A DNA stretch of 64,000 nucleotides from Octopus sinensis (Eukaryota), in NCBI RefSeq assembly GCF_006345805.1, contig NC_042998.1, forward strand, positions 154,132,001-154,196,000, written 5' to 3'. Positions 1 through 61,924 of the stretch are shown here, piece by piece (within the stretch, counting starts at the first letter, position 1; each line of letters opens with the position of its first letter). The position numbers and the translations under genes were made by a program. The notes under the pieces are model-generated. The model had not been told where the DNA came from and did no database searches. It worked only from the letters and a program-made list of their open reading frames with translations.

Positions 1-230
1 TGACCTAAAGGAATCAAAGTTTGGATATATGTGAATATGGATTATGATTATGTCAAAAAATTAGATCTGCTTTTAATATACATTCATGCAAACTCTGGAT
101 GGCAAGAGGTAATAAGCATTAACAATACAGAAGCAGAAATAGTTAGGCAGATATTGAGAACTGTATTTTTCAGAAATGGTGTTCCAGAAACATTATTGCA
201 CAGTTTTTCACTCAAGAAAACTTCTTAAGC
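1..230 (+). pseudogene. Decayed LTR-retrotransposon (Gypsy-like) integrase core fragment
   Basis: ORF 31-228 reads ...LLLIYIHANSGWQEVISINNTEAEIVRQILRTVFFRNGVPETL, matching the integrase pattern LvvvDxxSxWpEv...Lr.iF.r.GvPe.l; catalytic D residues appear lost. Confidence 0.45.
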
Positions 231-738
231 CACTGGCTTTATGAATAGACAAATATAGTGACTGGTAAGAATGTCTTACGAAACTACTACTCAAATTTAG
301 TATCACTGTGAAGAAAATGTCAAACCACAACTGGATTTTCATTCCAAGCAAGAAATAATAATACAATTGCAATTTTTAAGGGTGAACACAATATCCTTCA
401 GATCAAATAAGCTATGATATAAATATGCAGAATTATCCCCTCAAGCTTTAAATGTTATTTAGATAACTTACTAAAAATTGTGATTTGATAATTGATACAG
501 AATCAAGCAATACAAATAGTATTAGATATAGTTCTCAAAAAGCAAAAGGAATTAAACCAATTCCTCTTTATTTGAATTGTACCTGTCTTTAGATTTGTGT
601 TTGACTATCTGTACTTCATAAATCCACTTTCAATATTGGTTTACTTTCTTCAAAAAGATTATGTAAAACAAAATAAGTGAATAAAAAATATTTTTGTTAT
701 AAGATATTCCACAGGATGATTTTCTTTTTTCTTTTAAG

Positions 739-811
739 GAGAGTGCCAGATGGTTGTGCTTCAAAAAGTCCAGCTGAGAAAGGAGCTTCACCTTCTTATG
801 TACCAACTATG
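739..811 (+). CDS. SH3BP2: Internal coding exon of an SH3BP2/3BP2-like SH2 adaptor ([x]RVPDGCASKSPAEKGASPSYVPTM)
   Basis: Polypyrimidine acceptor tttctttttt cttttaag at 721-738; donor gtttgt at 812; 73 nt, phase 2 to phase 0; joins the next exon in frame; contains the (R)RVPDG motif. Confidence 0.6.
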
Positions 812-1398: not shown

Positions 1399-1434
1399 AT
1401 AATATCTGATGAACCTCCAACAACCACCATGAAA
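1399..1434 (+). CDS. SH3BP2: 36-nt coding exon (IISDEPPTTTMK) of the SH3BP2-like gene
   Basis: Acceptor ttttcttgttatag; consensus donor gtaagt at 1435; phase 0-0; open frame continuous with the flanking exons. Confidence 0.6.
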
Positions 1435-2700: not shown

Positions 2701-3059
2701 GCATACATACATATATATACACGCATACGTACATATTCAGCATAAACACTCTACCACTACAACTAATAACTGTTGGGAACACTTTCAAACCTGCCTTACA
2801 TTCGAACCAGAATCTCAAAAACATTGTCGCCTTACATCTCATTCTCATTTCATTACCAACACAGGGAAATAAAACTTACTTCTCACTACGGGACAATGGA
2901 TGATGGTAACAGATATTTACCACATGCTACCTTATCAAGTGAAGTATATTGTCATCCACTTCACCTCTAACCTTCATAGCGTACAGACAATTCAAACGAC
3001 CCACATCACTATACCACCACTGATACCTTCCAGACCAGCTGCAGGCCTACAGAACTATT

Positions 3060-4240
3060 CTTAACAGTGTACGCCAACGCGAGGGACGAATCTTCTTCCT
3101 CGATGCTCCTGGAGGGACAGGAAAAACATTTATTACAAAGCTTCTCCTTGCAGAAGTTAGGCAGCATCAGGACATTGCAGTAGCTGTAGCCTCCTCTGGC
3201 ACTGCAGCTACTTTGTCACCCAGTGGCAGGACAGCACACTCAACTTTTAAACTCCCTCTCAATTTAGCAGCATCCGAAATGCCTTCATGCAACATCAACA
3301 AAAGCTCAGATCAGGGACAAGTACTTAAAATGTGTCATCTAATTGTCTGGGATGAGTGAACTATGACTCACAAGGGAGCTTTGGAAGCATTAGATAGAGC
3401 CCTGAAAGACATCTGAGACTGTCAGGCTCCAATGTGAGGTGTAACGCTTCTGTTGTCAGGTGATTTCAGGCAAACTCTTCCTGTCATTCCGAAAGGCACT
3501 AGAGCAGATGAAGTCCAAGCATGCCTAAAGTCCTCTACCCTGTGGTATCATGTTACAATTTACAGTCTCACCACTAAAATGAGAGCTCAGCTACACGGTG
3601 ACAAAATGTCCACAAAGTTTGCACAGGACATTTTGACACTTGGTGAAGGCAAGATGCCTCTCAATGCTGCAGGACAAATGGAAGTGTGGTCATTTTCCTC
3701 TGTTGTTAATTCTGTAGATGACCTCAAAAACAAAGTCTTTCCCAACTTCACACAAAACTACCAAAATCACAATTGGCTGTGTGAAAGAGCAATATTAGCT
3801 CCAAAAAACGTCGCTGTTAACAAAATTAATCAACAGCTAATGCATTCTCTTCCCGGCACTATACACACTTACAAGTCTGTTGATACAATTCCAGATATAA
3901 ATGAAGTTGTGAACTATCCTCCTGAATTTCTCAATTCACTGGAGCTTCCGGAAAAGGTGATGATGTCTTTATTCCAAGAATTCCTCTTACTTCATCAGGA
4001 ACAGAAATTCCATTTACATTCAGAAGACTGCAATTCCCTCTTCGTGTCAGCTTTGCCATGTCCATTAACAAATCTCAGGGTCAAACCCTCTCTGTACCTG
4101 GTCTTCTCTTGGAAGAGCCCTGCTTCTCGCATGGGCAACTGTATGTTGGCTGCTCAAGAGTAGGAACCAAAAGAAACCTTTTTGTATATGCTCCACAAGG
4201 AAAAACAAGGAACATTGTTTACAACGAGGTGTTATAATCT
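3060..4240 (+). pseudogene. Helitron RepHel helicase domain pseudogene
   Basis: IFFLDAPGGTGKTF (Walker A), AVASSGTAATL, GRTAHSTFKLPL, GDFRQTLPVIPKG, WLCERAILAPKN; in-frame stops near 3357-3440. Confidence 0.9.
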
Positions 4241-4443: not shown

Positions 4444-5727
4444 TTGGGTTGTCCGGAAAGTTTGTGCCAATTTTTAAAGGAAAGTAAAAGGTCAATAAAT
4501 ACTTGCCATTACATTTTTAATCAATCAAATATGAACCATTTTGTTGCACAATGCGTCTCCATCTTTCCTTTAACTTGAAAATACCCTCTTCTCAGAATTG
4601 AGGTGGTTTCATGGCAAATAATTCATCGAGGTATCTTTTTACATCATCCAAGTAATTGAAATTTTTACCATTAAGACTATTCTGCAGAGACCTGAATAAG
4701 TGGAAATCCGAAGGAGCAATATCTGGTGAATATGGAGGGTAGGGTAACACATCCCAGTTAAGCTGTAGCATTTTTGCCTGGTTCCCAAAGAAATATGCAG
4801 TCTTGCATTATCATGTTGGAAAACAACACCCTTCCTGTTGGCCAATTCTGGACGTTTCTCTTGAATTGCTGCTTTTAACTCATCCAGCTGTGTGCAATAT
4901 TTCTCAGAATTAATTGTCTGGTTACTTGGGAGAAGCTCACAGTACAGAATTCCTTTCCAATCCCACCAGACACAAAGCAAGACTTTTTTAGGGTGAAGAC
5001 CCGCTTTTGAAGTGGCTAAGGGTGGCTCATATCACTTACTCCAGGATCGCTTTCTCTGAACATTTTGGTAGATAATCCATTTCTCATCACCTGTCACAGC
5101 TATTTTTAAAAAAGGTGCGTTTTTATTCCATTTATAAAGTGAATCACAGATGGAAATGTGATCCAAAAGGTTCTTCTCACTCAACTCATGTGATAGCCAA
5201 ACATCGTAGCGATTTGTATACCCAAGCTTTACTAGGTGCTCATGAATGACGAATTTTGATACGTTGAGTCTTTCTGCCAATTCTCAGGTTGTGCAATATG
5301 GGTTATTCTCAATTAATGACTTGATTTGGTAATCATCTGTAGTGCATGGTCTGTCTGATCGCTCTTAATCAATAAGGCTACGATCTCCACCTCGGAACCT
5401 TGTGAACCACTTCCATACAGTTCTTTCGGATAAAGAAACATCACCGTAAACTGCGCATATTTATTTGGCTGCTTGTGAAGCATTTTTCCCTTTATGGAAA
5501 AAGAAAAGCATCAAGTGCCAAAAATGAACTTTCTTATCTTCCATTTTAAAGGGTTACAGAATTAACACAGGTTATAGGAACACAAACCTTCTTCCATAAA
5601 AAGATAGCTTAAACTGTGTTCTATAATGGAGGTGTAGTCAAATCCTATTTCATGGACTCAACCATGTTCTAAAATAAGTCGAAAGGTAAGCTACTATAAA
5701 TCGGCAAGAACTTTCTAGACAACCCAA
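4444..5727 (-). mobile_element. Mariner (DD34D) DNA transposon, full length, defective transposase
   Basis: TIRs TTGGGTTGTCCGGAAAGTTTGTGCC / reverse complement at 5701-5727; TA at 4442-4443; 1284 bp; motifs VTGDEKW, QHDNAR, YSPDIAPSDFHLFRS split by frameshifts. Confidence 0.95.
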
Positions 5728-7669: not shown

Positions 7670-7771
7670 GGAGTAATCGCATAAATGGGAAACAAAGCGG
7701 AAAAAAGAGTACTCAAATACCAGTGGTAGAGTAATATGCTTTATTTAAAGCAGCAGAAAATTCAACAAAAT

Positions 7772-7809
7772 CTGTTACTCTGAGTTTCTCGTTGCCGTTC
7801 ATCAGACAG
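7772..7809 (-). ncRNA. Minimal type I hammerhead ribozyme motif in a PLE pseudo-LTR
   Basis: CUGU-CUGAUGA-ACGGCAACGA-GAAA-CUCAGA-GUA-ACAG: stem I CUGU/ACAG, intact core, palindromic stem III ACUC-A-GAGU; stem II only CG/CG with a GCAA loop and an A.A closing mismatch. Confidence 0.65.
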
Positions 7810-10189
7810 TTTTTGCTAGAATGGAACCGATATATCAATTCAATCTAGACTCTTACAAACGCTACACCTTTAAAAAAAATGGACTTGTTTGATTGGCCCT
7901 TTAGAAATAACGGTCAATCTTCGAGCGATAAACAAAAAAAGCTCAAAAATATATGTATATATATATATAAAAATTATAAAAATTATAGAAATTATAAAAT
8001 TCGAGGAAAAAACCTTACATTGAATAAAATACATATTGACGTTAATGAAGAAAATATAATTAATGCATAGAAATTAAAACTTATAAATATTACACTGCAA
8101 TACATATTCATATTAAAGTGTACATATATATATCAACATACACAGAAGGATGTGTGCAAACGCCATACACATACAGACGTATAAATATAAATATAAAATA
8201 TACACACAAATGCATGCATACATATATGTATGCAATCTATCTCGCACGCAAGTTAAAATCATCGATGTAGCGTTTCTCATTTACTGAGTAAAGCTTAAGT
8301 AAGGGGGATGTAAAGTTGTATCAGTATCAGTTAGAGAAAAAAAACGAAAGAAACGAAGAGAGAGAAGAAGGGGGAAGGAAAAAAGAAAAAGGAGGGGTGG
8401 GGAAAAAAACGAAATAAGAAAAATTATGTAACAAACTGTGTAACCGCGTTATTGACATATATGGAGACAAGTATACAAATACACAAGTTCGAATGGATAC
8501 ATACACATACAGTCGTGTATTGTCTTTGAATAAAATGTACAGTTTTTCTAATAGGCAAAGCTTGCATTTAAAATTATTTCTGTGTGCTCCATGCCTGTAT
8601 GGTGCCGCTCTGTCCAGAATGCTCCATGTCACGTTGAAAGGTGGGGTTTCCTTTTCTTTTAGTTCCCAGACATATTTTGCTAGGCTGGTCCTCTTCCTAT
8701 TCTCTGGGTATTTAAATGAATTTTTATGTGAATAAAATCGTGTTTTAAATTAATTTTCTGAAGTCCCTGTGTATGTCTTGTATTCCAATGAGCCTTCTAT
8801 TTGCACTTTGGCTCTATAAACTACTCCTTTCACTAGACATTTCCCTTCTAACGAACAGGAGTTTTCGTTTTTGCAATTGCATTTCTTAATGGGCTCGGCA
8901 CCATGTCTAATCTCAATCAGATTCCTATTATGTTGGCTAATGTAAGAGGCGAAATTTCTGCAACAAGAATAGCTAACCTTCAGGGTTCTTCTATTAAATA
9001 TCCTATAGAATTTATGACCCTGCTTAAAATGCTTAGAGACTAATCTCAAAAATTCCTTACCTATATTAGTCTTTACGGCCAAATTGAAAGCCGGGTTGAA
9101 CCACAAAACTTTCCTGGTCCTAGTTCTTCGTGCAGTATTATTACCAGCATTAAGCTGGTTGTACTGAATCTTCTCAGAGAATCCACTATTCTTTAATGCA
9201 CTATCGTAATAAGGTGCAGCATTATGGAATGCTGCCTCGTCCAAAGAAATTGAAGATATTCTTCTACTTACATTGCTGACTAAGTTCCTAAGGATAACTG
9301 GTGGATGGTTCGAATCTTTGCTAATATACGATAGCTTTTCATTGGGCTTACGGAAAGGTCTAAATCTATCCGACCTTACATTAAAATTTACGTCTAAAAA
9401 ATCTACACTATTCAGGTTAGCATCTATTGTAACCCGTAAGCCCATCCTTTGAAAGAAAGCAATAATGTCCTTCCTAAGTCTATCTGATTCATGGCCGTTT
9501 AGATTATGCGTGGCTATAAGGCCGTCATCCCTATATAAACCTGCATCTATAAATGTTTGTGCTTAAGCACACACATACACAACTGTATGTGTATGTTTGT
9601 GCTTAAGCACACACATACACGACTGTATGTGTATGTATCCATTCGAACTTGTGTATTTGTATACTTGTCTCCATATATGTCAATAACGCTGTTACACAGT
9701 TTGTTACATAATTTTTCTTATTTCGTTTTTTTCCCCACCCCTCCTTTTTCTTTTTTCCTTCCCCCTTCTTCGTTCCTTTTCCTTTCTCTTCCTTTCTTAT
9801 GTTTTTTTTTCTCTAACTGATACTGATACAACTTTACGTCCCCCTTACTTAAGCTTTACTCAGTAAATGAGAAACGCTACAGAGATGATTTTAACTTGCG
9901 TGCGAGATAGATTGCGTACATATATGTATGCATGCATTTGTGTGTATATTTTAGATTTAGATTTATACGTCTGTATATGTATGGCGTTTGCACACATCCT
10001 TCTGTGTATGTTGATATATATATGTACACTTTAATATGAATATGTATTGCAGTGTAATATTTATAATAAGTTTTAATTTCTATGCATTAATTATATTTTC
10101 TTCATTAACGTCAATATGTATCTTATTCAATGTAAGGTTTTTTCCTCGAATTCTATAATTTTTATATATCGGTTCCATTCTAGCAAAAA

Positions 10190-10227
10190 CTGTCTGATGA
10201 ACGGCAACGAGAAACTCAGAGTAACAG
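10190..10227 (+). ncRNA. Minimal type I hammerhead ribozyme motif (inverted copy)
   Basis: Same 38-nt sequence as 7772-7809, on the + strand. Confidence 0.65.
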
Positions 10228-10261
10228 ATTTTGTTGAATTTTCTGCTGCTTTAAATAAAGT

Positions 10262-11380
10262 AGATGTCTCGGGAAAGACACCAATAGCAAGCGGGGTGCC
10301 ACAGGGCACAGTCTTGGGACCCTTGCTGTTTTTGGTGGCGCTCTCTGACATGCCCTTGGTAGCACAAACAAAATCCCTCACTAGCTATGCTGATGACACA
10401 AAGGTAGCACAGGCAATCAAAAAACCCAGCTGATGCTGACCTTTTACAACAAGATCTGGATGCCATATACAAATGGGCTGAAGACAACAATATGCAATTT
10501 AATGCTGGTAAATTTCAAGCCTTACAATATCAAGCTGTAAACACATATACATTACAACACAACTATACTGGTCCAGGAGGGATCGAAATCCCAGTATCGA
10601 AATCAATACGGGACCTGGGGATAGACATGAGTGACGATGCATCTTTTTCTTCACACATCGCGAAGGTGGCGACAATGTGCAGACGACTCACTGGCTGGAT
10701 CCTGAGGACATTCCGGACAAGAGACTGCGAGACCATGTTGACACTATGGAAGACATTTGTCCTAAGCCGCCTGGACTACTGCTCCCAACTGTGGTCACCG
10801 CATAGTGTCAAACTAACCACAGAGCTTGAGACAATCCAAAGACATTTCACCAAGAGGATTTCCACCATGAAAGAAAAGAACTATTGGGAGAGGCTTAGGG
10901 AACTCAATTTGTACTCCTTGGAACGAAGACGAGAGAGATATGCAGTGATATACATATGGAAAATCCTGGAGGGACTAGCACCAAATTTTGGAATTGAGAG
11001 CTGTTCCAATCCCCGTACAGGACGTCACTGTGTGGTGCCAAAGGTCCCGTCTTCCACATCCAGGGTAAGGAGCAGATACTGTAATAGCCTGGGGTTCAGG
11101 GGCCCTCAGCTGTTCAACAAACTGCCAAGAAAACTAAGAGATCTACATGATGCGGATGTGGACATTTTCAAAAAACATCTAGACAAGCTGCTTTCCGGGA
11201 TCCCAGATGAACCCACTGCAAGGTACGAAGGTAACCTAAGGGCAGCAGCTACAAACTCTCTCTTAGATCAGTGGCCAGCCACGGCAAACTGGACTTAGAG
11301 AGGGTAGCAACAAGGGCGGTGCCCCAGCATGGCCTCAGCCGGATGGCTGAAACAAGTAAAAGAGTAAAAGAGTAAAAGAG
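10262..11380 (+). mobile_element. 5'-truncated CR1/L2-group LINE (RT C-terminal half plus 3' tail)
   Basis: SGVPQGTVLGPLLF, SYADDTK, MQFNAGKF, RDLGI, SRLDYCSQLWSP, SLERRRER; 3' stem-loop cagcc-ggat-ggctg and (GTAAAAGA)3 tail. Confidence 0.9.
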
Positions 11381-20439: not shown

Positions 20440-23400
20440 CTTTGGTTGTCTCCCATGAACACTTCTAAAGGCTTTATGCCACCCCCACCCCCTACTGTAT
20501 AAGGTAGTGATCATACAGTGCAAAATATGATAGTGTAGTGTACGCAGGTTGAACTTAAGACTATAGTTTTTCGTCTATGAATCCTGCCAAATGCGAGCTC
20601 TCTTTTCAGGTACATGACACCGCTGTCCCCAGCCCCAGGGTCTCAAGGGCCCATACCTCCCACACCCTCAGAGTTGGCACGCTCAACGTCGGCACACTGA
20701 AAGTTAGGTCTGGTGAAATTGCTGAGATGCTTGAATGGAGATGTGTTGATATGTGCTGCATCCAAGAAGTTAGGTGGAGAGGAGGTTCTGCTAGATTCCT
20801 CACAGGCAAAGAACACAGGTACAAGATTTTCTGGACAGGGAACACTGACGGGGTTGGGGGTGTGGGTATACTTCTTGCAGAGAAATGGGTAGATAAGGTG
20901 ATTGAGGTAGTCAGAGTATGCGACAGAATACTTAAGATTAGATTAGTGCTCCATCATGGGTTAGCAACCATTATCTTGGCCTATGCCCCTCAGCCAGGGC
21001 TACCTGATGGACTGAAAGGCTGATTCTATGACACCCTCTTGCAAACTACCGCATTGACGAATGACAGGGACCTTCCCTTTGTGGCTGGTGACTGCAATGG
21101 ACATGTTGGACAACTTGTCGGGGGTTTCCATGGCATACATGGAGGCTACAATTTTGGCTCTTGCAATGAGGAGGGAACCAGGCTGCTGGAGTTCTGTAAC
21201 ACAAATGATCTTATGGTTTGCGATACTAACTTCAGAAAACCTGAAGGAGGGAACAGAGTTGTTGACAAGGCTATTAGACAAAAGAAACAGGCTTAGAAGG
21301 ACTGGAAGAATGGTGGTAGCAGGGAAGTGTATCAGACTGCCAGAAGGGAAGCTAGGAGGCAGGTTTATTTAGCCAGAGGGGAAGCAGATAAGAAAAAGTT
21401 AGCCAATGTTCTGCGCTGTGAGGACCAAAGACTTTAGGTATTTCGTGTTGCAAGACAGTGTGTGAGAGAGAATCGTGACGTGGTAGGAGAGAAATGTGTT
21501 CGCAAGGATGACGGTTCACTTGCGATAAATGAGGATGCAAAGAGAGAGGTTTGGAGATGCCACTATGAAAGGTTGCTGAATGAGGAAAATGAATGGGATA
21601 AAGAGAGTCTGCTGAATGTTGACCCAACAGAGGGACCAGATATCCGAGTTGAGAGTACCTTGATAGATAAGGCAATTAGAAGTATGAAGACAGAGAAAGC
21701 CCCAGGTCCATAGGAATTACTGCAGAGATGCTCAAAATATCTGCCATTGTCAGCTATAGCCTAGTCACCTGCATAGTTAACAAGGTGATACACGAAGGAG
21801 TAATACCCAATGACTGGTGTAGCAGCATAGTAGTCAACTGCTACAAAGGTAAAGGTGACACTCTAGATACAAATAATTACAGAGGTATCAAGCTGTTGGA
21901 TCAGGTAATGAAGGTTACAGAGAGGGTCATAGCCCAACTGATTAGGGAGAGAGTCAGCTTGGATAAGATGCAGTTTGGTTTCATGCCAGGGAAAAACACC
22001 ACTGATGCCATATTTCTGGTAAGACAGCTGCAAGAGAAATACCTAGCCAAAGATAAGCCCCTGTACCTGGCTTTCGTTGACATAGAGAAAGCCTTTGACA
22101 GATTCCCCCAACCTCTTTTCTGGTGGTCAATGAGGAAACTAGGGATAGATGAATGGCTAGTGAGAGTTGTGCAAGCCATGTACAGGGACGCTGTAAGTAA
22201 GGTAAGGGTTGGCAATGAGTACACTGAAGAATTCAGGGTAGAGGTAGAGGTCCACCAAGGTTCAGTCCTCAGCCTCCTCCTATTTATCATTGTCCTCCAG
22301 GCAATAACGGAGGAATTCAAGACAGGATGCTCCTGGGAGCTCCTCTATGCTGATGACCATGCTCTAATTGCTGAGTCACTATTGGAACTAGAGGAGAAGT
22401 TTCAGGTGTGGAAACAAGGATTAGAATCGAAGGGCCTTAGAATCAACCTAGCTAAAACCAAAGTCCATATAAGTAGGAAGGCAGGCAAACCACAAATCCC
22501 TTCAGGTAGATGGCCCTGCTCGATCTGTAGTAGAGGCATAGGTAGAAACTCTAAAAGATGTACCCAGTGTAAGCTATGGATACATAAGAGGTGCAATCTA
22601 AGGAAGGCTAACTGGGAAGATAGTTTTTGTATGTGACAGATGCTCAGGAGCAATAAGCACTGAAAATGCGCAGAGAACAACTTCTGCCACATTCCAGGGA
22701 GGAAACGAGAAGTAGTTGATAGCTTCTGTTACCTAGGTGACCAAGTCTTTAGTGGGGGAGGGTGTGCTGAAAGTGTAGCTGCTAGAATAAGACTAGCTTG
22801 GGCAAAGTTCAGAGAGCTCTTACCTCTGCTGGCGACAAAGGGCCTCTCGCTCAGAGTAAAAGGTTGACTGTATGACTCATATGTACGAACAGCCATGCTA
22901 CATGGCAGTGAAACATGGGCTGTGACTGCTGAGGACATGTGTAAGCTCGCAAGGAATGAAGCCAGTATGATCCGATGGATGTGTAATGTGAGTGTGCATA
23001 CTCGACAGAGTGTAAGTACCTGGAGAGAAATGTTAGACCTAAGAAGCATCAGATGTGGTGTGCAAGAGAGACGACTGCACTGGTATGGTCATGTGGTGAG
23101 AATGGATGAGGACAGCTTTGTGAAAAAGTGCCTCAGCCTAGCGGTTGAGAGAACCTGTGGAAGAGGTAGACCCAGGAAGACCTGGTATGAAGTGGTGAAG
23201 CATGACCTTCAAACTTTGGACCTCACTGAGGAAGTGACTAGTGACCAAGACTTTTGGAAATATGCCTTGCGTGAGAAGAACCGGCAAGCCAAATGAGACC
23301 ATAATCTTATGGCCTATGCCAGAGGCATAACCAGCCCACTTATGCATACCTTTTTCTTCTTTGGACATTAAAACTCTACTTGCAAAGACCTGTTCAGGAA

Positions 23401-43063: not shown

Positions 43064-45260
43064 TTTATTTAAAAGTAGAAGAAATATAACAAAAGCTGTT
43101 ACTCAGAGTTTCATGTTCCCGTTCGTTGGACAGTTTTGTTAAAATAGAACAGAAATAGTGATATCAAAACTAGTTAAAGGATACACCTTTAAAAATGGAT
43201 TTGTTTCATTGGTCCTTTCAAATAACGGACTTAAGCATGCGATAAACAAAATAAATGAATTCAATATAAATTCATCCTATTATAAAAAATCAAAGAAAAA
43301 CCTTAAATCGAAGAGCGGATTCAAAATACATATTGTCATTAATTATATATGAAATATAATTCGATTAATTCAATTAATACATTAAAAATTGAAATATTTT
43401 ACAACAGTATATACTCATACTAAACCATCAATATACATATATACATCAAAATACACAGATGGATATACACAGACCACATTCATATGCAGATATATATATG
43501 TAAGATGTAAATATACACACAAATACACATATACATTTTCTTTCTTTTTTCTTTTATTCTTTTACTTGTTTCAGTCATTTGACTGCGGCCATGCTGGAGC
43601 ACCGCCTTTAGTCGAGCAAATTGACCCCAGGACTTATTCTTGTAAGCCCAGTACTTATTCTATCGGTCTCTTTTGCGAAACCGCTAAGTGACGGGGACGT
43701 AAACACACCAGCATCGGTTGTCAAACAATGCTAGGGGGACACACACATGCATATATATATATATACATATATACGACGGGCTTCTTTCAGTTTCCGTCTA
43801 CCAAATCCACTCACAAGGCTTTGGTCGGCCCGAGGCTACAGTAGAAGACAATTGCCCAAGGTGCCACGCAGTGGGACTGAACCCGGAACCATGTGGTTGG
43901 TAAACAAGCTACTTACCACACAGCCACTCCTGCACCTATACATATGTACACAATCTTGCCCACATGCAAAAATCACTTGGTGTATACATTTAGACTAGAA
44001 GTAAAACGTAGAGAGGGGGAAGAAAAAGAAAAGGTAAAGTAAGGATCATATAAGCAACAGTTAGCTAAAGAAGTGAGTAAGAGAAGGGGAGGGGGCATAG
44101 AGAAAAAATACTTTTCCATAACAAAAGAAAGGAAGAAAGAAAGAAGTCTGAATATGCATAACAAATGTACACAAAATAAAATTACGTATACAGGTGTATA
44201 TAAAAGTGTATATTAGCAGTAAATCCACATATAAGAACACATATATAAATATATAGAGATAAGTACGTAAATACACATCCACATAAATTCAAGTGAATAC
44301 ATGCATACATATACATCCATGTAGGTATGTGCATAAGTATAAACATACACGCTTACTTACACATATACATAGGCGCATACATACGAATACATATGCATGC
44401 CAACAATACAAATATCCACATAAAAGCATGTCTAGGTCCTGATGTATATACAAACAACATTATTTTTAAAAATTGCTGAGTGCATAATAATAAAATTCGG
44501 ATAAATGACATGCAAAATAGAACACCCCATATCGAATTATCTATAAATTAAACGATTAAAATGGGTTTATAAAATACAATAAAATGAAATAAAATAAAAG
44601 CAGAATCTTTAAGAAGAAAATAATATTTGCATATAACAGTCGAAGGTTTTCCTTAAGAAATATGTCGAAATATATACAATAACTTTGTGATGCGGAATAA
44701 ATCATGCATAATAAGAAACAAATCCAACAATGTGATTAAAAACCAGTCTAAGAATCAAAAATATATGCTATCCATAAGGTATATTGCTAGCCAACAGTTT
44801 AAATTTAGCTGCGTGTCTGCAGGAATTCAAGAGTTTGCTTCTTTGATTTAAAGAGTTTTTGTCCTGGAATAAAATGAAATATTTTTCCAGCAGGCATAAA
44901 TCACACTTGGTGGGTCTTTTATGTGCACCGTGCCTGTATGGTGTAGCTCTATCCAAAATACTCCATGTCACGTTGAAAGGTTGGGCTTCTTTTTCTTTTA
45001 ATTCCCAGACATATTTCGCCAGGTTGGTCTTCGTCCTATTTTCGGGGTATCTGAAGGAATTTTTATGCGAATAGAATCAGGTTTTGAAAAAATTTTCAGA
45101 AGCCCTTATAAAGTTCTATATTCGCGTGAGCCTTCTATCTGCACCTTGGCTCTATACACGATTCCTTTCTCCAGACATTTCCCTTCCAATGGACAGGAGG
45201 ACCCATCTTTGCAATTACAATTCTTAAGAAGAGAATCAGCACTTTTGCTGAAAAGAAGTA
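43061..45260 (-). mobile_element. Second Neptune-type PLE 3' fragment (endonuclease C-terminus plus pseudo-LTR), interrupted by a SINE
   Basis: KNCNCKDGSSCPLEGKC at ~45230; TWSILDRATPYRHG...CDLCLLEK...CRHAAKFKL (44768-44971); pLTR homologous to 7740-8300 with a degenerate hammerhead (CCAACGA) at 43096-43133. Confidence 0.8.
43555..43938 (-). mobile_element. Full-length tRNA-derived SINE
   Basis: Head ggagtggctgtgtggtaag...ggttcagtccc; 3' tail shared with the CR1-like LINE. Confidence 0.9.
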
Positions 45261-46528: not shown

Positions 46529-46590
46529 GCTATGGTTGATGATTATTGGAAAGCTTTTGAGTTCAATGGCCCCAAAGAAGTTTCTATGAA
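46529..46590 (+). CDS. SH3BP2: Coding exon (AMVDDYWKAFEFNGPKEVSM[K]), start of the SH2 domain
   Basis: Acceptor tttatttgcttctgacag; donor gtaagt at 46591; 62 nt, phase 0 to 2, completing AAG with the next exon. Confidence 0.8.
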
Positions 46591-46764
46591 GTAAGTATAA
46601 TGTACTTACTATAAGTATAAATATAATGAGAAAAGACAGCCATTTCATCAGCCAATTTGCTGTGTTTATTAAAATATACTATATATCTAAAATTATTAAA
46701 GTAAAACTGTTTACAACAAATTCAAAGTATATGAGAGTATGCTGGAACCATACAAAATAAAGTA

Positions 46765-48028
46765 TTGGGTTATCCCATAAATAATGCAGTTTTCTCAATT
46801 GCATGAACTAAAAGTCGGAGTGGGGGCAGGATAAACTACCTGCATCAACTTGCTATAAAAGCGGGTAGTAATTTTACCTTCTGCTTATTCTTAGTGTGTG
46901 TTTTTAAGAGTGGGATTTGATTTTAACAGTTATTTTTTTCAAAGTTATAATGGAAGTGACAAAGGAGCATATTCAGTATATTTTGCTTTATCAGTTCAAT
47001 AAAGGCAACAGCACAATGGAAAGTGCAAGGAATATTAAGGCAGTATATGAGGATTGGACAATAAGTGTTAGCCAGCGTCAACGGTGGTTCCAGAAATTCT
47101 GAGCTGGAAACTACAGCCTAGAAGATGAGCCTCATCCTGGAAGATCTGTAGAGCTTGATGAGGATGTCTGCAAACCCTGGTGGAACAAAATCCCATCATA
47201 ACTGTTGAGGAACTAGCAGAGAAGCTTGGATTTGGTCATTCAACCATTCATTGACACCTGCATGCCACCAGAAAATTCATCAAATTGAGTCAATGGGTTT
47301 CTGAGTCTAATCATGCACAGAGAGGGAAATGTGCTCTTCTTTGCTGTCACATCTCATAAATGAATCTTTTTTGGACTGTATAGTGACTGGTGTCAAGAAA
47401 TAGATTCTCTATAAAAATGTCAAGTGCCAAAGACAATGGGTAGAGAAAGGAGAAACACTGACACACCAGGCTAAAGGTCTTCACCCATGTAAGGTGTTGT
47501 TATCTGTTTGGTGGGATATGAAAGGTTTAGTCCATTTTGAACTTTTAAACCCAAACCAAATGATAACAAAGATGTACTATAAGTAGCTTGAGTGGTTTAA
47601 GTCAACACTAGAAGAAAAATGACCATCTTTGGTTTCAATACGAAAGGTGTTCTTCCATCAGGATAATGCTTGGCCACATACAGTGAGGATGACTTTCCAA
47701 AGGCTGGGGCAGTTTGAATGGGAAACGATACCCCACCCACCATATTTGCCAGACATTGCCCCATCTGATTATCATTTATTCCATAGTCTTCAAAATCATT
47801 TGAACAGAAAAAATTTGTGGTCAGAACAGTATTGGAGGAATATTTTTCGTCATGGACAAGTGAATTTTGGAAGAGGGGCTTTGCAGTCTACCACATAGAT
47901 TCAAGCACATTATAGAAAATGAAGGAGAGTATATTTTAGATTAAAAAAGAACTTTGTTTATCTTAATTTTGAAAAATACAGCATTATTTATGTAAAAAAA
48001 ATGCAGCATTATTTATGGGATGACCCAA
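46765..48028 (+). mobile_element. Mariner DNA transposon, full length, defective
   Basis: TA|TTGGGTTATCCCATAAATAATGC ... GCATTATTTATGGGATGACCCAA|TA; 1264 bp; FFHQDNAWPH, PDIAPSDYHLF. Confidence 0.95.
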
Positions 48029-48430
48029 TATATCACAAAGTTTTTGTAAAATGTGTCAAAGATAGATGTTTGATGACTACTCCACACTATGAATAATTTT
48101 CAAGATACATTATTAATATAGCCAACACTATATACTATCACTACTTTAGCATCAGCATCACTTCCTATTTTCATGCTTTTTTTTAGGGCAAATGAATTGT
48201 ACTACATCTCCTCATTGAAAAAAGTACACAAGATTTAATGAATATGCTGATCATTTTAGCCCTCTTTCACTTAAGATTTAATTCAAATCTTATACTAGAA
48301 TTTATATATATATATATATATATATGTTCATTTAAAGTTCTTAGTTTTCCTGCTTTGGGTGTTTGTAATTCAGTAAAATGAATTTATTAAAATTCTAAAT
48401 TTATTAAGCCAGTCAGTACACCAACAATTA

Positions 48431-49504
48431 ATCATCATCTGCTTTCCATGCTAGCATGGTTGGACGATTTGACTGAGTACTGGCAAACCAGATGGCTGCA
48501 CCAGACTCCAATCTGATCTGGCAGAGTTTCTACAGCTGGATGCCCTTCCTAATGCCAACCACTCCGAGAATGTAGTGGGTGCTTTTACATGCTACCGGCA
48601 TAAAGGCCAGTCAGGCAGTACTGGCAATGGCCATGCTCAAATGGTGTTTTTTACATGCCACCTGCATAGGAGCCAGTCCAGCGGCACTTGCAACGACCTC
48701 GCTCAAATGTTTTTCACGTGCCACCAGCACAAGTGCCAGTAAGGCGATGCTGGTAACAATCATGCTCAAATGGTGCTTTTTATGTGCCAGTTTGTTGCTC
48801 GGACAACCATCACACTCAGATAGTACTCTTAGCGCTCCACCAGCATGGATGCCAGTCATCGAATTTGATTTCGATTTCGATTTCACTTGCCTCAACAAGT
48901 CTTCGCAAGCAGTGTTTAGTATCCAATGAAGGAAAGGTACACATAAGTTGGCTGGTTACACCCCTGGCATAGGCCACGAAGTTATGGTCTCACTTGGCTT
49001 TCCAAGTCTGCTCAAGTACAGCATATTTCCAAAGATCTCGGTCACTAGTCATTGCCTCGGTGAGGCCTGATGTTCGAAGGTCATGCTTCACCACCTCATC
49101 CCAGGTTTTCCTGGGTCTACCTCTTCCACAAGTTCCCTCAACTGCTAGGGTGTGGCACTTTTTCACACAGCTATCCTCATCCATACTCGCCACATGGCCA
49201 TAACAGTGCAGTCATCTCTCTTGCACACCACATCTGATGCTTCTTAGGTCCAACTTTTCTCTCAAGGTACCTACACTCTGTTGAGTATGAACACTGACAT
49301 TACACATCCATCGGAGCATACTGGCTTCATTCCTTCCAAGCTTATACATGTCCTTAGTAGTCACGGCCCATGTTTCACTGCCATGTAGCATGGCTGTTCG
49401 TACATATGTGTCATACAGTCTACCTTTTACTCTGAGCGAGAGGCCCTTTGTCACAGCAGAGGTAAGAGCTCTCTGAACTTTGCCCAGGCTATTCTTATTC
49501 TAGC
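48431..49504 (-). mobile_element. 5'-truncated RTE LINE 3' portion
   Basis: HGSETW (49212-49454), RGRPRKTW (48990-49193), conserved 3' end. Confidence 0.9.
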
Positions 49505-50384
49505 GTTGTAATTAATTTTGCTCTTTAAAACTCAGTCTTCAGTCAGTGACTTCTAAAGTTTTGAAACCATAACTTTGTGTATCTGTTTTATATAATTGAA
49601 AGGGAATGGATTGGCGATCCATATGCTGAAAAGATTAGTAGTTGCCATTACCATACTGTCTTCAATGCTTTCTGATTCAGTCTATCTAGCTGTAAGCAGG
49701 TACAGCGCTTGACAGTATGCAACATAAATATTGTATAATTAGCAAATATTCCATTAGCATACAATGCTGAGTTTATATCTTCCTATGAATTTGGACCATG
49801 TTTGCTTGTACTTGATTTAGTTTCATGCAGTGGACTTAATATGAACAATCACTGTATTTCTGAACCAAATTCTTTTAAATTATAATGTAAATTTCTAAAA
49901 AAGCAATTTAAGTAGAACATGCTAAATCTGTTACAAGCACTATCAGTTCTATGTCCCTCAAAAGGATTTCATAAATAAGTGATAATAGTATATGTAAATC
50001 TGAATTACTAATGTTTTTGATTACATTTAAGAGCAATACATTATTAGTATTTATTGTTGTGTAACCTTTATCAAGCAAACCTGAAGGAGATTTAGCTTAT
50101 TCAAATATACTGGGTGATTGCATAGGCGCTCCTTCATTATTATTTTGTCTGAGGAGTAAAGACATTGCAGTTGTTGGCTTGATGTACATCTAATAGAAGA
50201 TTGAGGTGCTGAAGTTTCTGCAAAACTGAAGAATTTAAGGTTAGTGTTTTGCAAGAATACACTAGAGAGCCAAGTGTCCTTGGAAAGAAGGACTACATAT
50301 TGTATTCAGTGCAATGTTTAAGGAAAGTAATATAATATTGTTGGTAAGAATCATAATACCTTTTCAAATAGCTATTTCTTTTAT

Positions 50385-50692
50385 TGTTTACTTGTGTCAG
50401 TCATTAGACTGTGGTCATGCTGGAGCACCACCTTGAATAATTTTAGTCAAACAAATCAACCCCATGACTTTTTTTTAAAAGTTTGGTAGTTATTCTGTTG
50501 GTCTATATATAAGACAGGCTTCTATTGGGTATATATGACAGGCTTCTTTCAGTTTCCATCTACTGAATTTATTCACAAGGCTTTGGCTAGCCCAAGACTT
50601 TAGTAGAAAACACTTGCCCAAGGTGCTACACAGTGGGACTGAACCTGGAACCATGTGGTTGGGAAGCAAACTTCTTATCACACAGCCATGCT
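50385..50692 (-). mobile_element. tRNA-derived SINE (decayed)
   Basis: Homologous to 43555-43938. Confidence 0.8.
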
Positions 50693-50906
50693 TGGAAATT
50701 CTGAAAGCTTCTGTCTGTTAAAATATCCATAAAAGCTAGAGAAAGAAAGAATAGAGGAATTTGGTGAGCCAGATATTGACTTTTCTTAAATGAGATGAAC
50801 TGATCTGATAGGGGACATTCTTAGGGATATAGTGAAGAGAACTTTAATTGTCTGATGGGCGAGTTCTGCAGTTATTTTCTTTGTAAATTTTATTATGCTA
50901 ATACAG

Positions 50907-50976
50907 GTTGTTGACTGCACTTGAGGAATCTGGAGCTTACATGGTTAGAGAGAGTGAAAATAAAGTAGCCCCCAAG
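50907..50976 (+). CDS. SH3BP2: Coding exon (LLTALEESGAYMVRESENKVAPK), SH2 betaB strand with the FLVRES-type Arg
   Basis: Acceptor ctaatacag; donor AAG|gtaatc; 70 nt, phase 2 to 0; GAYMVRES. Confidence 0.88.
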
Positions 50977-51317
50977 GTAATCTGCTATTTCTTTTGTTCT
51001 GTGTGGAACAAGTAATTCCTTTCAGATTATTTGTTTCCTTTTTATATTGACATTAAAATTGTTTAAACTTTTAATTATTTTGGATTCATTGATTTTCAAT
51101 AACGAAGAGATTCATTTTTACTCGATAGTTCCAGTTGAAGAATTCTTTGCTTTAGCTGTTAGTCATATTAAAGAACATATACAGTGTTCAAATTTTTATA
51201 ACTCTGTATGATACTATGGTATTCAGTCTATAACATGTGTTGAGATAGGAAGTAAGAGTTAAGGTAAATTGCAATGACAATCATCATGGTAATTTTAATG
51301 TTTCCTTTTTTCCCTAG

Positions 51318-51386
51318 ACCTTACTTGTTTACTGTGCTGAATTAAAAAGAACTCAAAAGTATCAAATCTTTTATGAAAGTACTCCA
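51318..51386 (+). CDS. SH3BP2: Coding exon (TLLVYCAELKRTQKYQIFYESTP), SH2 betaC/betaD
   Basis: Acceptor tttccttttttccctag; donor gtaagt; 69 nt, phase 0-0. Confidence 0.88.
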
Positions 51387-52025
51387 GTAAGTTGAATATT
51401 TATGTTTTAGAGGTTTATCTTTATTTAAACTCTTATACATTGTCAGTTAAATAATTGAATAAGTACTTTGTGTCTCATCTTCAGCATCTCACATTATCAT
51501 CATCATCATCATTTAATGTCCGCTTTCCATGCTGGCATGGGTTGGATGGTTTGACTGAGGACTGACATGCCAGGAGGTTGCACCAGGCTCCAGTCTGATC
51601 TGGCAAGTTTTCTACTGCTGGATACCCTTCATAACATCAACCGCTCCAAGAGTGTAATAGGTGCTTTTTACCTGCCACTGGCATGGGAGCCAGTCAGGTG
51701 GCACTGGCATGGACCATGCTTGAATGGTGCCAATCAAATGACACTTGCATCAACTACGCTCAAATGGTGTTTTTTTTTACGTGCCACCAGCATGCGAGCC
51801 AATCAAGTAGCACTGGCATTGACCTCGCTTGGATGGTGTTTTTAACGTGCCACTGGCATGGGTGTCAATCAGGCAACACTGGCATTGGCCACGCTTGGAT
51901 GGTGCTTTTTACGTGCCTATAACACAGGTGCTAGTCAGGCAGTGCTGGCATTGGCCAGGACTATGATTTCGCTTGGCCCAACAGGTCTTCTCAAGCATAG
52001 CATATTGCTCAACGTTTAATGGGTA

Positions 52026-52443
52026 TGTAACGTGAAAGGATCTATCATCGAAGCACTGGCAGGGTGTCGAGATCCTTTCTAGTCACATACAATAATTCTT
52101 GTAGAAAACAAACAGACGAAACTCAGGTTAAAGGTGAACAGACAACTTGGTTTATTGATTCATGGTTGTACGTTGTCTGATGGGGGAATAGACAGCCTCT
52201 GAGATACTGCTGGTGTTGGTCGTTGAGGTTGGTTGAAGTTGGTTGAAGCTGGTGTGTGGCTGTCAGAGCCAGGAAAACCGTGACCGATCGCAGTGCTGTC
52301 TTGAGCCGAAGAGAGAGATTTGAGGTTCGCGGGCTCGAGAGATGTTTTCCCGCACATGCGCATGGGGAAGACTTCCGGTGGCCACCCGGAAGTAGTCCCA
52401 TTCTGCGCATGCGCGCCGAACCCTACACTGTAGCATCACTACA
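52026..52443 (-). repeat. Complete 3' LTR
   Basis: TGTAGTGATG...TCACGTTACA on the minus strand; AATAAA at 52151-52156; preceded by the PPT. Confidence 0.92.
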
Positions 52444-52568
52444 GGGCTCCCCTCCGAGTGCGAAGTACGGCAACCAGAATATTGTGGTGGTGCTGCAGAA
52501 AACAGAAGGCTTGCCGATCCCCCAGAAGACTTGGTACATACTATTATACAATAAGAAACATTTTAAAG

Positions 52569-55100: not shown

Positions 55101-55130
55101 ATGAAGGGGAGATGCCCATGGGCTGGTTGG

Positions 55131-55317
55131 TGGCTGTCAGAGCCAGGAAAACCGTGACCGATCGCAGTGCTGTCTTGAGCCGAAGAGAGAGATTTGAGGT
55201 TCGCGGGCTCGAGAGATGTTTTCCCGCACATGCGCATGGGGAAGACTTCCGGTGGCCACCCGGAAGTAGTCCCATTCTGCGCATGCGCGCCGAACCCTAC
55301 ACTGTAGCATCACTACA
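55131..55317 (-). repeat. Truncated 5' LTR (U3-proximal part only)
   Basis: Matches 52257-52443; fused directly to the RT coding sequence. Confidence 0.92.
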
Positions 55318-60929: not shown

Positions 60930-61560
60930 CCACCTCTTTTTCCAGGATATCCTGTGGAATTATGGTTTCTGTTAAGTGAGATCTACAAGAGACTGTCCTC
61001 TGTTTCACTCACTAGTGGGCTTTTCACTCTCAATATATTTGGTGAAAATAAGTACCTGTTATCAGCAAAGCATTCTATTGTGTTTGATATGCAAATTTCT
61101 TAGTTAAACTATTTTCCTATGTACTTCATCTGTCTGTTGTCTCTTGGGTCAGAAATTTCTGTACAATTACATCATAGTACCATGTGCTGGTAAGGTCTCT
61201 TTGACCCACATTTTGTCACCTTTGAAGTGCTCCAAGGTTTGGTATGGTCCCTAACATTCATCCTCCTATACATCAATAATCTACTTTCCTAAACTGCTGC
61301 ACCTATAAAAGAAACAATTCAATACACCACTCACTCATAAACATGAATATGTGACTAGAATTCTAAGGCTGCTACAGTATCACTTCAGAGCCAGAAAATA
61401 CTTCAGCTCCCCAAACTAAGTAACAATTTTAAAAATGCATATGAAACCCACATGTCACCAGACAGATTGGTATGAAGTCACTTGCCAACTTAGTCTTACT
61501 GATGTACTGTCTCATCAATGTGTATTCCTTACTGTAGAAATTCTGCATTTCAACCATAAA
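60930..61560 (+). pseudogene. Heavily decayed CR1/Jockey-group LINE RT remnant
   Basis: ISKAF..V...NFLVKLFSY...VVSWV.NF and a frameshifted VPQG...LLYINNL-like motif at ~61040-61285. Confidence 0.5.
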
Positions 61561-61750
61561 TGACCAACATTTTAAATTCCATAATTGGAGCATCAACCCT
61601 ATCTATTCTTGCTTATTTTAACCTAGAGAGATTGTACCTAACAGGTTAGGGCAATATACCTGTCTTCTTCCAAAATAATAATTAACAGCTAAAAGCTTGT
61701 GGAGTTTCAGTGCTGACATCTAAAATTTATTTATTTTTTTCTTTTTGCAG

Positions 61751-61924
61751 AAACCAAAATATTATCTTAAAAAAGGAATTGAGTTCAACTCTTTAGAAGA
61801 GCTTATTTATCATTATTTTTATCATAGCATATCAAATGAATATGAGTCAAAGCTGTTGACACCTTATACATATATACCAAACTGGGAAGCTGTTCTTGAA
61901 AAATGTATGCAAGAAGAAAACTAA
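61751..61924 (+). CDS. SH3BP2: Terminal coding exon (KPKYYLKKGIEFNSLEELIYHYFYHSISNEYESKLLTPYTYIPNWEAVLEKCMQEEN*), SH2 C-terminal half
   Basis: Strong acceptor ttttttctttttgcag; phase 0; YYL...F.SL.ELI.HY...L..PY SH2 signature; TAA at 61922-61924. Confidence 0.9.
   Translation, partial: KPKYYLKKGIEFNSLEELIYHYFYHSISNEYESKLLTPYTYIPNWEAVLEKCMQEEN

What the first reader, a model, noticed from the sequence alone, without database searches (positions are those of the whole stretch)
739..760. Probable tankyrase-binding degron (R)RVPDG at the position equivalent to the cherubism hotspot
Seen: the exon begins G|AGA GTG CCA GAT GGT = x-R-V-P-D-G. If the upstream exon ends in AG or CG, the split codon is Arg, giving RRVPDG. 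Established: tankyrase binds RxxPDG; human 3BP2 has RSPPDGQS upstream of its SH2, and cherubism mutations there (R415/P418/G420) block tankyrase/RNF146-dependent degradation. Inference: this degron circuit may be conserved in a mollusc.
Basis: partly seen in the sequence, partly recalled or inferred. Interest (0 to 1): 0.7.

Follow-up and report, generated by a model that had tools for sequence, protein, structure and literature searches.

The report
Degenerate tankyrase motif in octopus SH3BP2
The flagged bases start a real coding exon of the octopus version of the adaptor protein SH3BP2, but the codon across the splice junction is leucine, not arginine, so the peptide reads LRVPDG and lacks the arginine that tankyrase needs: it looks like an eroded copy of a degron that other molluscs, a brachiopod and a ribbon worm still carry intact.

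Summary
Window 739-810 (+) is a coding exon beginning G|AGA GTG CCA GAT GGT. My six-exon splice model from the window (739-810, 1399-1434, 46529-46590, 50907-50976, 51318-51386, 61751-61924) matches residues 139-298 of RefSeq XP_029658105.1 (Octopus sinensis LOC115232387) at 100%. [quoted passage not shown]

The junction codon is Leu, not Arg. All five O. sinensis isoforms and an independently annotated O. vulgaris protein read KAKGN-L-RVPDG. The O. vulgaris DNA shows a 20-nt micro-exon ending ...AAC TT|GTAAGT, about 9 kb upstream and outside the window. The octapeptide is therefore LRVPDGCA, which lacks the essential position-1 Arg (TTS 0.40 against 0.79 for RRVPDGCA). In Argonauta the homologous exon has no PDG.

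The site is positionally right. Sepia, three gastropods, Lingula and Lineus carry canonical RxxPDG/RxxGEG motifs before the SH2 domain. Octopus keeps a different canonical motif, RSLPEGSS, just after the PH domain and outside the window.

Verdict: a real exon and a real SH3BP2-like gene, but the proposed degron is most likely a decayed relic. Interest is low to moderate.

The parts
717..738 (+). Polypyrimidine tract and AAG 3' splice site of the intron before the exon
   Evidence: tgattttcttttttcttttaag. The exon start at 739 is fixed by the 100% match of the spliced model to XP_029658105.1.
739..739 (+). Third base (G) of the split junction codon. With TT from the upstream micro-exon it gives TTG = Leu.
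   Evidence: RefSeq and O. vulgaris proteins read ...KGN-L-RVPDG. O. vulgaris micro-exon L001:21277-21296 is CTGAAGGCAAAAGGTAACTT|GTAAGT.
740..760 (+). Codons for R-V-P-D-G-C-A, positions 2-8 of the octapeptide LRVPDGCA: a degenerate tankyrase-binding motif with P4, D5 and G6 kept and R1 lost
   Evidence: TTS score is 0.40, against 0.79 if position 1 were Arg (matrix from PMC10706912 Table S2).
739..810 (+). Coding exon Ea: (L)RVPDGCASKSPAEKGASPSYVPTM, part of the disordered linker before the SH2 domain
   Evidence: Identical in O. vulgaris (L001:30469-30540).
1399..1434 (+). 36-nt micro-exon Eb: IISDEPPTTTMK
   Evidence: ttatag|ATA...AAA|gtaagt. Confirmed by the 100% protein match.
46529..46590 (+). 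Exon Ec: AMVDDYWKAFEFNGPKEVSM + AA, the start of the SH2 domain
   Evidence: acceptor tgacag, donor AA|GTAAGT. Confirmed.
50907..50976 (+). Exon Ed: (K)LLTALEESGAYMVRESENKVAPK, the SH2 'FLVRES' region
   Evidence: Confirmed.
51318..51386 (+). Exon Ee: TLLVYCAELKRTQKYQIFYESTP, central SH2 strands
   Evidence: Confirmed.
61751..61924 (+). Last coding exon Ef: KPKYYLKKGIEFNSLEELIYHY...MQEEN, with stop TAA at 61922-61924 (C-terminal end of the SH2 domain and of the protein)
   Evidence: Confirmed.
713..714 (+). Unused in-frame alternative AG acceptor (ccacag|G), 24 nt upstream. If used, the exon would read L-MIFFFLL-RRVPDG and give a canonical RRVPDGCA.
   Evidence: in-frame read-through LRRVPDGCA. 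None of the five RefSeq isoforms or the O. vulgaris model uses it.

Best explanation
Window 739-810 is an internal coding exon of the Octopus (sinensis/vulgaris) SH3BP2-like adaptor gene LOC115232387, which encodes a PH domain, a proline-rich disordered linker and a C-terminal SH2 domain. The exon encodes linker residues about 40 aa before the SH2 domain. Its first full codons, R-V-P-D-G, together with a split Leu codon (TT from a 20-nt micro-exon about 9 kb upstream, plus G739), give the octapeptide L-R-V-P-D-G-C-A. This is most likely the eroded remnant of an ancestral pre-SH2 tankyrase-binding motif (R-x-x-P/G-D/E-G) that is intact in decapodiform cephalopods, vetigastropod and caenogastropod snails, a brachiopod and a nemertean. 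In the octopod lineage the essential position-1 Arg is gone (Octopus), or the motif is destroyed altogether (Argonauta). By the published sequence rules this site should therefore not act as a canonical tankyrase/RNF146 degron. If the octopus protein is still controlled by tankyrase, the better candidate is the canonical RSLPEGSS motif five residues after the PH domain, encoded outside the window. Shown: the exon, the gene model, the junction codon, the motif scores and the pattern across species. Inferred: homology of the relic with the ancestral motif, and loss of binding.
For: Gene model: the six window exons spliced together are 100% identical to residues 139-298 of XP_029658105.1. Pfam finds PH and SH2 domains in isoform X1. 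The best single-SH2 PDB match is human SH3BP2, 2cr4. Relatives are named SH3BP2(-like) by NCBI.

Junction codon: KAKGN-L-RVPDG is read in isoforms X1-X5 and in O. vulgaris CAI9717469.1. The O. vulgaris micro-exon is CTGAAGGCAAAAGGTAACTT followed by a consensus GTAAGT donor. A 20-nt exon is unlikely to be annotated without transcript evidence (inference).

Motif rules: Arg1 and Gly6 are essential (PMC6082341). TTS is 0.40 for LRVPDGCA, against 0.80 for human RSPPDGQS and 0.79 for hypothetical RRVPDGCA.

Positional homology: the pre-SH2 motifs are RSPGEGQP (Sepia), RGAAEGRP (a decapodiform-like transcriptome protein), RGKPDGDS (Gigantopelta), RGTPDGAS (Haliotis), RGSPDGSS (Nucella), RKSPDGQS (Lingula) and RSEPDGRS (Lineus). 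There are 14 motifs with TTS >= 0.6 in 13 linkers, against 0.75 +/- 0.85 in shuffles.

Relaxed constraint in octopods: the homologous Argonauta exon reads LKPHEYDY (GAT GGT has become GAT TAT, plus two extra codons).

Alternative site: RSLPEGSS is conserved in Octopus and Argonauta and aligns with RTTADGSS, RTLGDGQE, RSKPDGES and RPPGDGKD.

Tankyrase is present in O. bimaculoides (PMC9688111).
Against: The junction rests on predicted proteins from two annotation pipelines and on O. vulgaris DNA. I did not see O. sinensis transcripts or its micro-exon DNA (the gene range was too long to fetch).

Tankyrase-binding motifs without Arg1 have been reported: EBNA1 EGGPDGEE (validated) and GRB14 LPLPDGTR (proposed). 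LRVPDGCA scores slightly above GRB14's motif, so weak binding is not excluded.

In isoforms X2/X4 an Arg lies 12 residues before the Gly, the same spacing as the looped second motif of Axin1.

An in-frame alternative acceptor at 714 would create RRVPDGCA.

Alignment of short motifs in fast-evolving linkers is loose, so homology of the relic with the ancestral motif is an inference. PDG could be here by chance (about 2%).
Confidence: 0.72

Rival explanations
1. Weak or auxiliary non-canonical tankyrase-binding site. LRVPDGCA would still contact an ARC domain without Arg1 (GRB14-type LxxPDG), or would use a distal Arg (KRK upstream; spacing R-12 in isoforms X2/X4, as in the second Axin1 motif). 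It would add avidity to the canonical RSLPEGSS site on the multivalent tankyrase scaffold.
For: P4-D5-G6 are the preferred residues and there is no Pro at position 7. TTS is 0.40, at or above the lowest validated scores (0.38) and above GRB14's LPLPDGTR at 0.38. Extended motifs with a looped-out insert are documented. RVPDG is retained in O. bimaculoides, O. vulgaris and O. sinensis.
Against: Positional scanning found Arg1 essential, and the cherubism hotspot named in the finding includes R415 (finding text). The TTS is additive and does not enforce essential positions. The three Octopus species are too close for retention to mean constraint. Argonauta lacks the motif entirely.
Confidence: 0.15
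2. An intact canonical degron RRVPDGCA is made in some transcripts. This could happen through the in-frame alternative 3' splice site at 713-714, which would insert MIFFFLLR, or through an unannotated upstream exon ending in AG/CG.
For: The genomic read-through is in frame and reads LRRVPDGCA. The site ccacag|G is a consensus CAG acceptor 24 nt upstream. O. bimaculoides XP_052834347.1 shows that annotators can join other upstream exons to this exon (W at the junction).
Against: None of six annotated products uses it. The extra segment would be translated from the polypyrimidine tract (FFFLL), which is odd for a disordered linker. The tract before 714 is weaker (12/20 pyrimidines against 17/20). 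The upstream part of the O. bimaculoides model looks like a spurious first exon of a gene split into two models.
Confidence: 0.05
3. Pure coincidence. RVPDG never was part of a tankyrase-binding motif, and the ancestral pre-SH2 motif was lost elsewhere in the octopod linker.
For: Linkers are poorly alignable. PDG arises in about 2% of shuffled linkers. The Argonauta exon shows rapid turnover.
Against: P-D-G are exactly the preferred residues at positions 4-6. The distance to the SH2 domain is about 43 residues, within the 20-54 range seen in most relatives. MAFFT places the peptide next to the RxxPDG column. An Arg is displaced by only one residue.
Confidence: 0.08

Closest known systems
Human SH3BP2 (3BP2) tankyrase-binding motif RSPPDGQS (residues 415-422), the cherubism hotspot
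   Same: Same protein architecture: PH domain, proline-rich linker and C-terminal SH2. The SH2 domain is the best single-SH2 PDB match (2cr4). The motif lies a few tens of residues before the SH2 domain, with identical P-D-G at positions 4-6.
   Different: Position 1 is Leu, not Arg, which is the same position as the cherubism-associated residue R415. TTS is 0.40 against 0.80. The motif is split by an intron after a 20-nt micro-exon. The octopus linker is much shorter.
Lophotrochozoan SH3BP2-like proteins (Lingula XP_013383314.1, Gigantopelta XP_041371048.1, Haliotis XP_071098906.1, Lineus XP_064630841.1, Acanthosepion CAE1289024.1)
   Same: Orthologous family at 31-38% identity, with alignable PH and SH2 domains. 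They share the post-PH motif column (RSLPEGSS in Octopus).
   Different: They keep a canonical pre-SH2 motif (RKSPDGQS, RGKPDGDS, RGTPDGAS, RSEPDGRS, RSPGEGQP). Octopus has LRVPDGCA and Argonauta has none.
GRB14 proposed unconventional tankyrase-binding motif LPLPDGTR
   Same: The L-x-x-P-D-G pattern in an adaptor protein with a C-terminal SH2 domain, with nearly equal TTS (0.38 against 0.40).
   Different: GRB14's motif is only proposed, binds weakly and may need a distal Arg. It belongs to an unrelated protein family.
Axin1 second (extended) tankyrase-binding motif
   Same: An Arg 12 residues before the Gly with a looped-out 7-residue insert. Octopus isoforms X2/X4 (KRKKAKGNLRVPDG) have the same spacing.
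   Different: In isoforms X1/X3/X5 the spacing is 13. There is no evidence that the octopus segment loops out. The Arg sits in a generic basic patch.

Membership tests
SH3BP2-like adaptor proteins | N-terminal PH domain | tested here: met
   Pfam PF00169 on isoform X1, E = 1.8e-10. The PH domain is encoded upstream of the window and the RefSeq models are N-terminally truncated.
SH3BP2-like adaptor proteins | SH2 domain at the extreme C-terminus | tested here: met
   Pfam PF00017, E = 2.4e-9. It is encoded by window exons 46529-61924, with the stop 17 residues after the PYTY.
SH3BP2-like adaptor proteins | SH2 domain closest to that of vertebrate SH3BP2 | tested here: inconclusive
   2cr4 is the best single-domain hit (24.7 bits; 50.8 bits with the family profile). 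PLC-gamma nSH2 scores similarly. No reciprocal search against a full vertebrate proteome was possible.
SH3BP2-like adaptor proteins | Proline-rich SH3-binding linker | not tested
   RPLPETP and PPLPIIKRK are visible in isoform X1, outside the window. No binding test was done.
Canonical tankyrase-binding motif (R-x-x-[small]-[D/E]-G-[not P]-x) | Arg at position 1 | tested here: not met
   Position 1 is Leu (TT|G) in six annotated proteins and in O. vulgaris DNA.
Canonical tankyrase-binding motif (R-x-x-[small]-[D/E]-G-[not P]-x) | Gly at position 6 | tested here: met
   GGT at 752-754.
Canonical tankyrase-binding motif (R-x-x-[small]-[D/E]-G-[not P]-x) | Small or hydrophobic residue at position 4, Asp/Glu at 5, no Pro at 7 | tested here: met
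   Pro, Asp and Cys respectively. Rules are from PMC6082341.
Canonical tankyrase-binding motif (R-x-x-[small]-[D/E]-G-[not P]-x) | Physical binding to tankyrase ARC domains, PARylation and RNF146-dependent turnover | not testable with these tools
   Needs peptide binding and cell assays.
Unconventional (Arg-less) tankyrase-binding motif | Gly6 present and octapeptide TTS at or above about 0.38 | tested here: met
   TTS is 0.40. The criterion is permissive and its authors warn that it is prone to false positives.
Tankyrase-RNF146 degradation circuit in the host | Tankyrase gene present in Octopus | not tested
   Taken from the literature only: XP_014782906.1, tankyrase-1-like, O. bimaculoides (PMC9688111). 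RNF146 was not examined.

The most novel reading that the evidence does not exclude
Lophotrochozoan SH3BP2-like proteins ancestrally carry two tankyrase-binding motifs, one just after the PH domain and one before the SH2 domain. Octopods have naturally lost the essential Arg of the second one, the residue equivalent to cherubism-associated human R415. What remains, LRVPDG, may still act as a weak Arg-independent or distal-Arg site whose strength differs between splice isoforms (R at -12 in X2/X4, -13 in X1/X3/X5). That would make degron strength tunable by alternative splicing at a micro-exon.
Probability: 0.1. Interest if true: 0.5.

Novelty: new member of a known kind. Interest (0 to 1): 0.22.

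Why it matters
The tankyrase-3BP2 degron is a textbook case of a short linear motif whose loss causes a human disease. This window shows that the gene and the motif position exist in an octopus, but the motif itself has lost its essential arginine. That corrects an attractive but wrong reading. It also illustrates how a splice-junction codon decides the fate of a short motif. The side result is modestly useful for the evolution of tankyrase substrates: canonical motifs at two conserved positions in brachiopod, nemertean, gastropod and cuttlefish orthologues, with loss of one or both in octopods and heterobranch snails. The published survey (PMC9688111) covered SH3BP2 only in chordates and Nematostella. 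It suggests octopus and heterobranch proteins as natural degron-loss variants.

Tried and rejected
1. The first homologue search, with exon peptides joined by X's, returned nothing although the protein is in the database. This was a limit of the word index, not evidence of absence. The exhaustive HMMER search found the protein.
2. I looked for the upstream exon inside window 1-738. The only donor giving Arg (GAG|GTAATA at 109) has a 10-codon open frame with no acceptor, and I judged by eye that it overlaps a decayed transposon-like ORF (4-225, no Pfam hit). Rejected.
3. The candidate SH2 N-terminal exon at 45175-45257 (FAEKK) was rejected as part of a repeat. The true exon is 46529-46590.
4. 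Fetching the O. sinensis gene DNA failed because the gene range is about 197 kb. The O. vulgaris locus L001, 97-99.6% identical to the window in collinear blocks, was used instead.
5. The O. bimaculoides locus L003 has no recognisable micro-exon within 10.5 kb upstream of the exon, so the junction could not be checked in that species.
6. A NAGNAG-type shift (aag|gag|ag, 736-743) was considered. Using the GAG acceptor would delete the Arg (L-VPDG) and would not create a motif.
7. A-to-I RNA editing cannot turn TTG into an Arg codon.
8. The family-profile search of the PDB does not single out SH3BP2 over PLC-gamma. Orthology therefore rests on architecture, the best single-SH2 hit and source names.

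Full report
OBSERVATION. On the + strand the window reads ...tgattttcttttttcttttaag|G AGA GTG CCA GAT GGT TGT GCT..., with G at 739. The frame stays open to ...CCA ACT ATG|gtttgt (donor at 811). This is the only one on the gene's strand that follows a splice acceptor.

GENE MODEL. A search bounded by splice sites added 51318-51386 and 46529-46590. Together with 739-810 and the 36-nt exon 1399-1434, this gave a 160-aa product.

An exhaustive HMMER search of 1.84 billion representative proteins returned P0001 (298 aa), which is 100% identical over residues 139-298. P0001 is XP_029658105.1, [quoted passage not shown]. All six exons and their phases are therefore confirmed.

Pfam finds a PH domain and an SH2 domain in isoform X1. 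The SH2 domain ends the protein. Its best single-domain match among solved structures is human SH3BP2, 2cr4 (24.7 bits; 50.8 bits with a family profile), although PLC-gamma nSH2 is close. [quoted passage not shown] The window is 97-99.6% identical to the O. vulgaris locus in collinear blocks, which is consistent with an O. sinensis origin.

THE JUNCTION CODON. Nothing in window 1-738 can serve as the upstream exon. The proteins settle the point. Isoforms X1-X5 of O. sinensis and the independently annotated O. vulgaris CAI9717469.1 all read ...K(L)KAKGN-L-RVPDGCASK....

In the O. vulgaris locus L001 the preceding exon is a 20-nt micro-exon, ttttttaaag|CTG AAG GCA AAA GGT AAC TT|GTAAGT, at 21277-21296. 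It lies 9.2 kb upstream of the RVPDG exon at 30469. That places it about 8.5 kb beyond the start of the window. The split codon is therefore TT+G = Leu.

Caveat: these are annotation products plus DNA from the sister species. I did not see transcripts.

IS LRVPDGCA A TANKYRASE-BINDING MOTIF? The published rules say that Arg at position 1 and Gly at position 6 are essential. Position 4 should be small (G, P, A, C), position 5 should be Asp or Glu, and position 7 must not be Pro (PMC6082341).

I took the normalised scoring matrix from PMC10706912 (Table S2) and reproduced the published scores: RSPPDGQS 0.80, LPLPDGTR 0.38, EGGPDGEE 0.44. On the same matrix LRVPDGCA scores 0.40 and the hypothetical RRVPDGCA scores 0.79.

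So the peptide has ideal P-D-G but lacks the essential Arg. The neighbouring Arg is one residue too close (R to G is +4 instead of +5), and no Arg lies at -6 to -8 as an "extended" motif would need.

Two loopholes remain. First, Arg-less motifs have been reported (EBNA1 validated, GRB14 LPLPDGTR proposed). Second, isoforms X2/X4 place an Arg 12 residues before the Gly, the spacing of Axin1's looped second motif. I give these about 15%.

An in-frame alternative acceptor at 713-714 would yield ...LLRRVPDG, but no annotated product uses it and it would translate the polypyrimidine tract. I give this about 5%.

COMPARATIVE EVIDENCE. Thirteen family members were aligned and scanned. Two motif positions recur.

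- Five to sixteen residues after the PH domain: RSLPEGSS (Octopus and Argonauta, 0.65), RTTADGSS/RTIADGSS (cuttlefish and a decapodiform-like transcriptome protein, 0.76), RTLGDGQE (Gigantopelta, 0.96), RSKPDGES (Lingula, 0.80), RPPGDGKD (Lineus, 0.95).
- Twenty to 110 residues before the SH2 domain: RSPGEGQP (Acanthosepion, 0.80), RGAAEGRP (0.64), RGKPDGDS (Gigantopelta), RGTPDGAS (Haliotis), RGSPDGSS (Nucella), RKSPDGQS (Lingula), RSEPDGRS (Lineus), all about 0.78-0.79.

In all there are 14 motifs with TTS >= 0.6 in 1,903 linker residues, against 0.75 +/- 0.85 (maximum 4) in 2,000 shuffles. The sequences are related, so this overstates independence. Transcriptome-derived proteins P0033 and P0034 confirm the decapodiform motifs.

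Octopus LRVPDGCA lies about 43 residues before the SH2 domain and sits next to the second motif column in the alignment. Argonauta's homologous exon (L002:25326-25403) reads x-LKPHEYDYPSE... At the DNA level, CCA GAT GGT corresponds to CCA CAT GAA TAT GAT TAT, so the Gly is gone as well. Heterobranch snails (Biomphalaria, Bulinus, Aplysia) lack both motifs.

A supplement of PMC9688111 shows RLRPEGKS before the SH2 domain of Nematostella SH3BP2. It also shows that no mollusc was included in that survey. The same paper reports a tankyrase gene in O. bimaculoides.

INTERPRETATION. The pre-SH2 tankyrase-binding motif is old and widespread, so its presence in molluscs is expected rather than surprising. 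In the octopod lineage it has decayed: Arg1 is lost in Octopus and the whole motif is lost in Argonauta. The PH-proximal motif is retained in both. The flagged peptide is therefore best read as a relic (about 0.72). Weak non-canonical function, an intact motif in rare isoforms and pure coincidence are the minority readings.

NOVELTY AND SCORE. The exon and gene are already annotated in RefSeq. The specific hypothesis fails its stated test. The two-site pattern across Lophotrochozoa, and its erosion in octopods and heterobranchs, is a small new comparative observation. Interest is 0.22.

Noticed in passing
outside the window; P0028 residues 82-89; O. vulgaris L001:6438-6461: A canonical tankyrase-binding octapeptide, RSLPEGSS (TTS 0.65), lies five residues after the PH domain in Octopus and Argonauta. 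It aligns with RTTADGSS (Sepia), RTLGDGQE (Gigantopelta), RSKPDGES (Lingula) and RPPGDGKD (Lineus). This looks like a second, conserved candidate degron site in lophotrochozoan SH3BP2-like proteins.
   Followed up: partly
window 1399-1434; L001:21277-21296: The linker is encoded by very small exons: a 36-nt exon inside the window and a 20-nt micro-exon upstream of it. Isoforms differ by one Leu (KRKLKAKGN against KRKKAKGN) and by optional upstream exons.
   Followed up: partly
window 736-743: Tandem AGs at the acceptor (aag|gag|ag). Use of the GAG acceptor would delete the Arg codon in frame (L-VPDG). No annotated isoform shows this.
   Followed up: no
window 52572-55136 (-), within 52026-55317: An uninterrupted 855-aa ORF with reverse transcriptase, RNase H, integrase zinc-binding and integrase core domains (LTR-retrotransposon pol). 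The 3.3-kb segment that holds it is absent from the otherwise 99.5%-identical O. vulgaris locus, so it looks like a recent insertion in the SH2-domain intron.
   Followed up: partly
window 3024-4234 (+) and 4595-5283 (-): PIF1-like helicase fragments (Helitron-type, E = 6e-30) lie next to a mariner-type transposase fragment (PF01359, E = 4e-25), inside the large intron after exon 1399-1434.
   Followed up: partly
window 7729-8520 and 9615-10270: Inverted repeat arms of 100-264 nt, 95-99% complementary, flank a 270-aa ORF on the minus strand (8753-9562) that has no Pfam match. The adjacent 296-aa ORF at 10408-11295 (+) also has no Pfam match.
   Followed up: partly
window 55640-58313 (-): Fragmented non-LTR-type reverse-transcriptase ORFs (RVT_1 hits at 56185-57009). 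Related copies elsewhere in the window (about 20.6-23.4 kb and 27.3-28.9 kb) are 82-86% identical.
   Followed up: no
O. bimaculoides L003 and proteins P0025/P0026: In O. bimaculoides RefSeq the gene is split into two models: XP_052834348.1 (PH half, running into an intron) and XP_052834347.1 (SH2 half). The second has what looks like a spurious first exon that puts Trp at the junction before RVPDG.
   Followed up: partly
proteins P0004, P0009, P0010: Heterobranch gastropod orthologues (Biomphalaria, Aplysia, Bulinus) have neither tankyrase-binding motif. The Aplysia orthologue is named 'interactor protein for cytohesin exchange factors 1', probably from PH-domain similarity alone.
   Followed up: no
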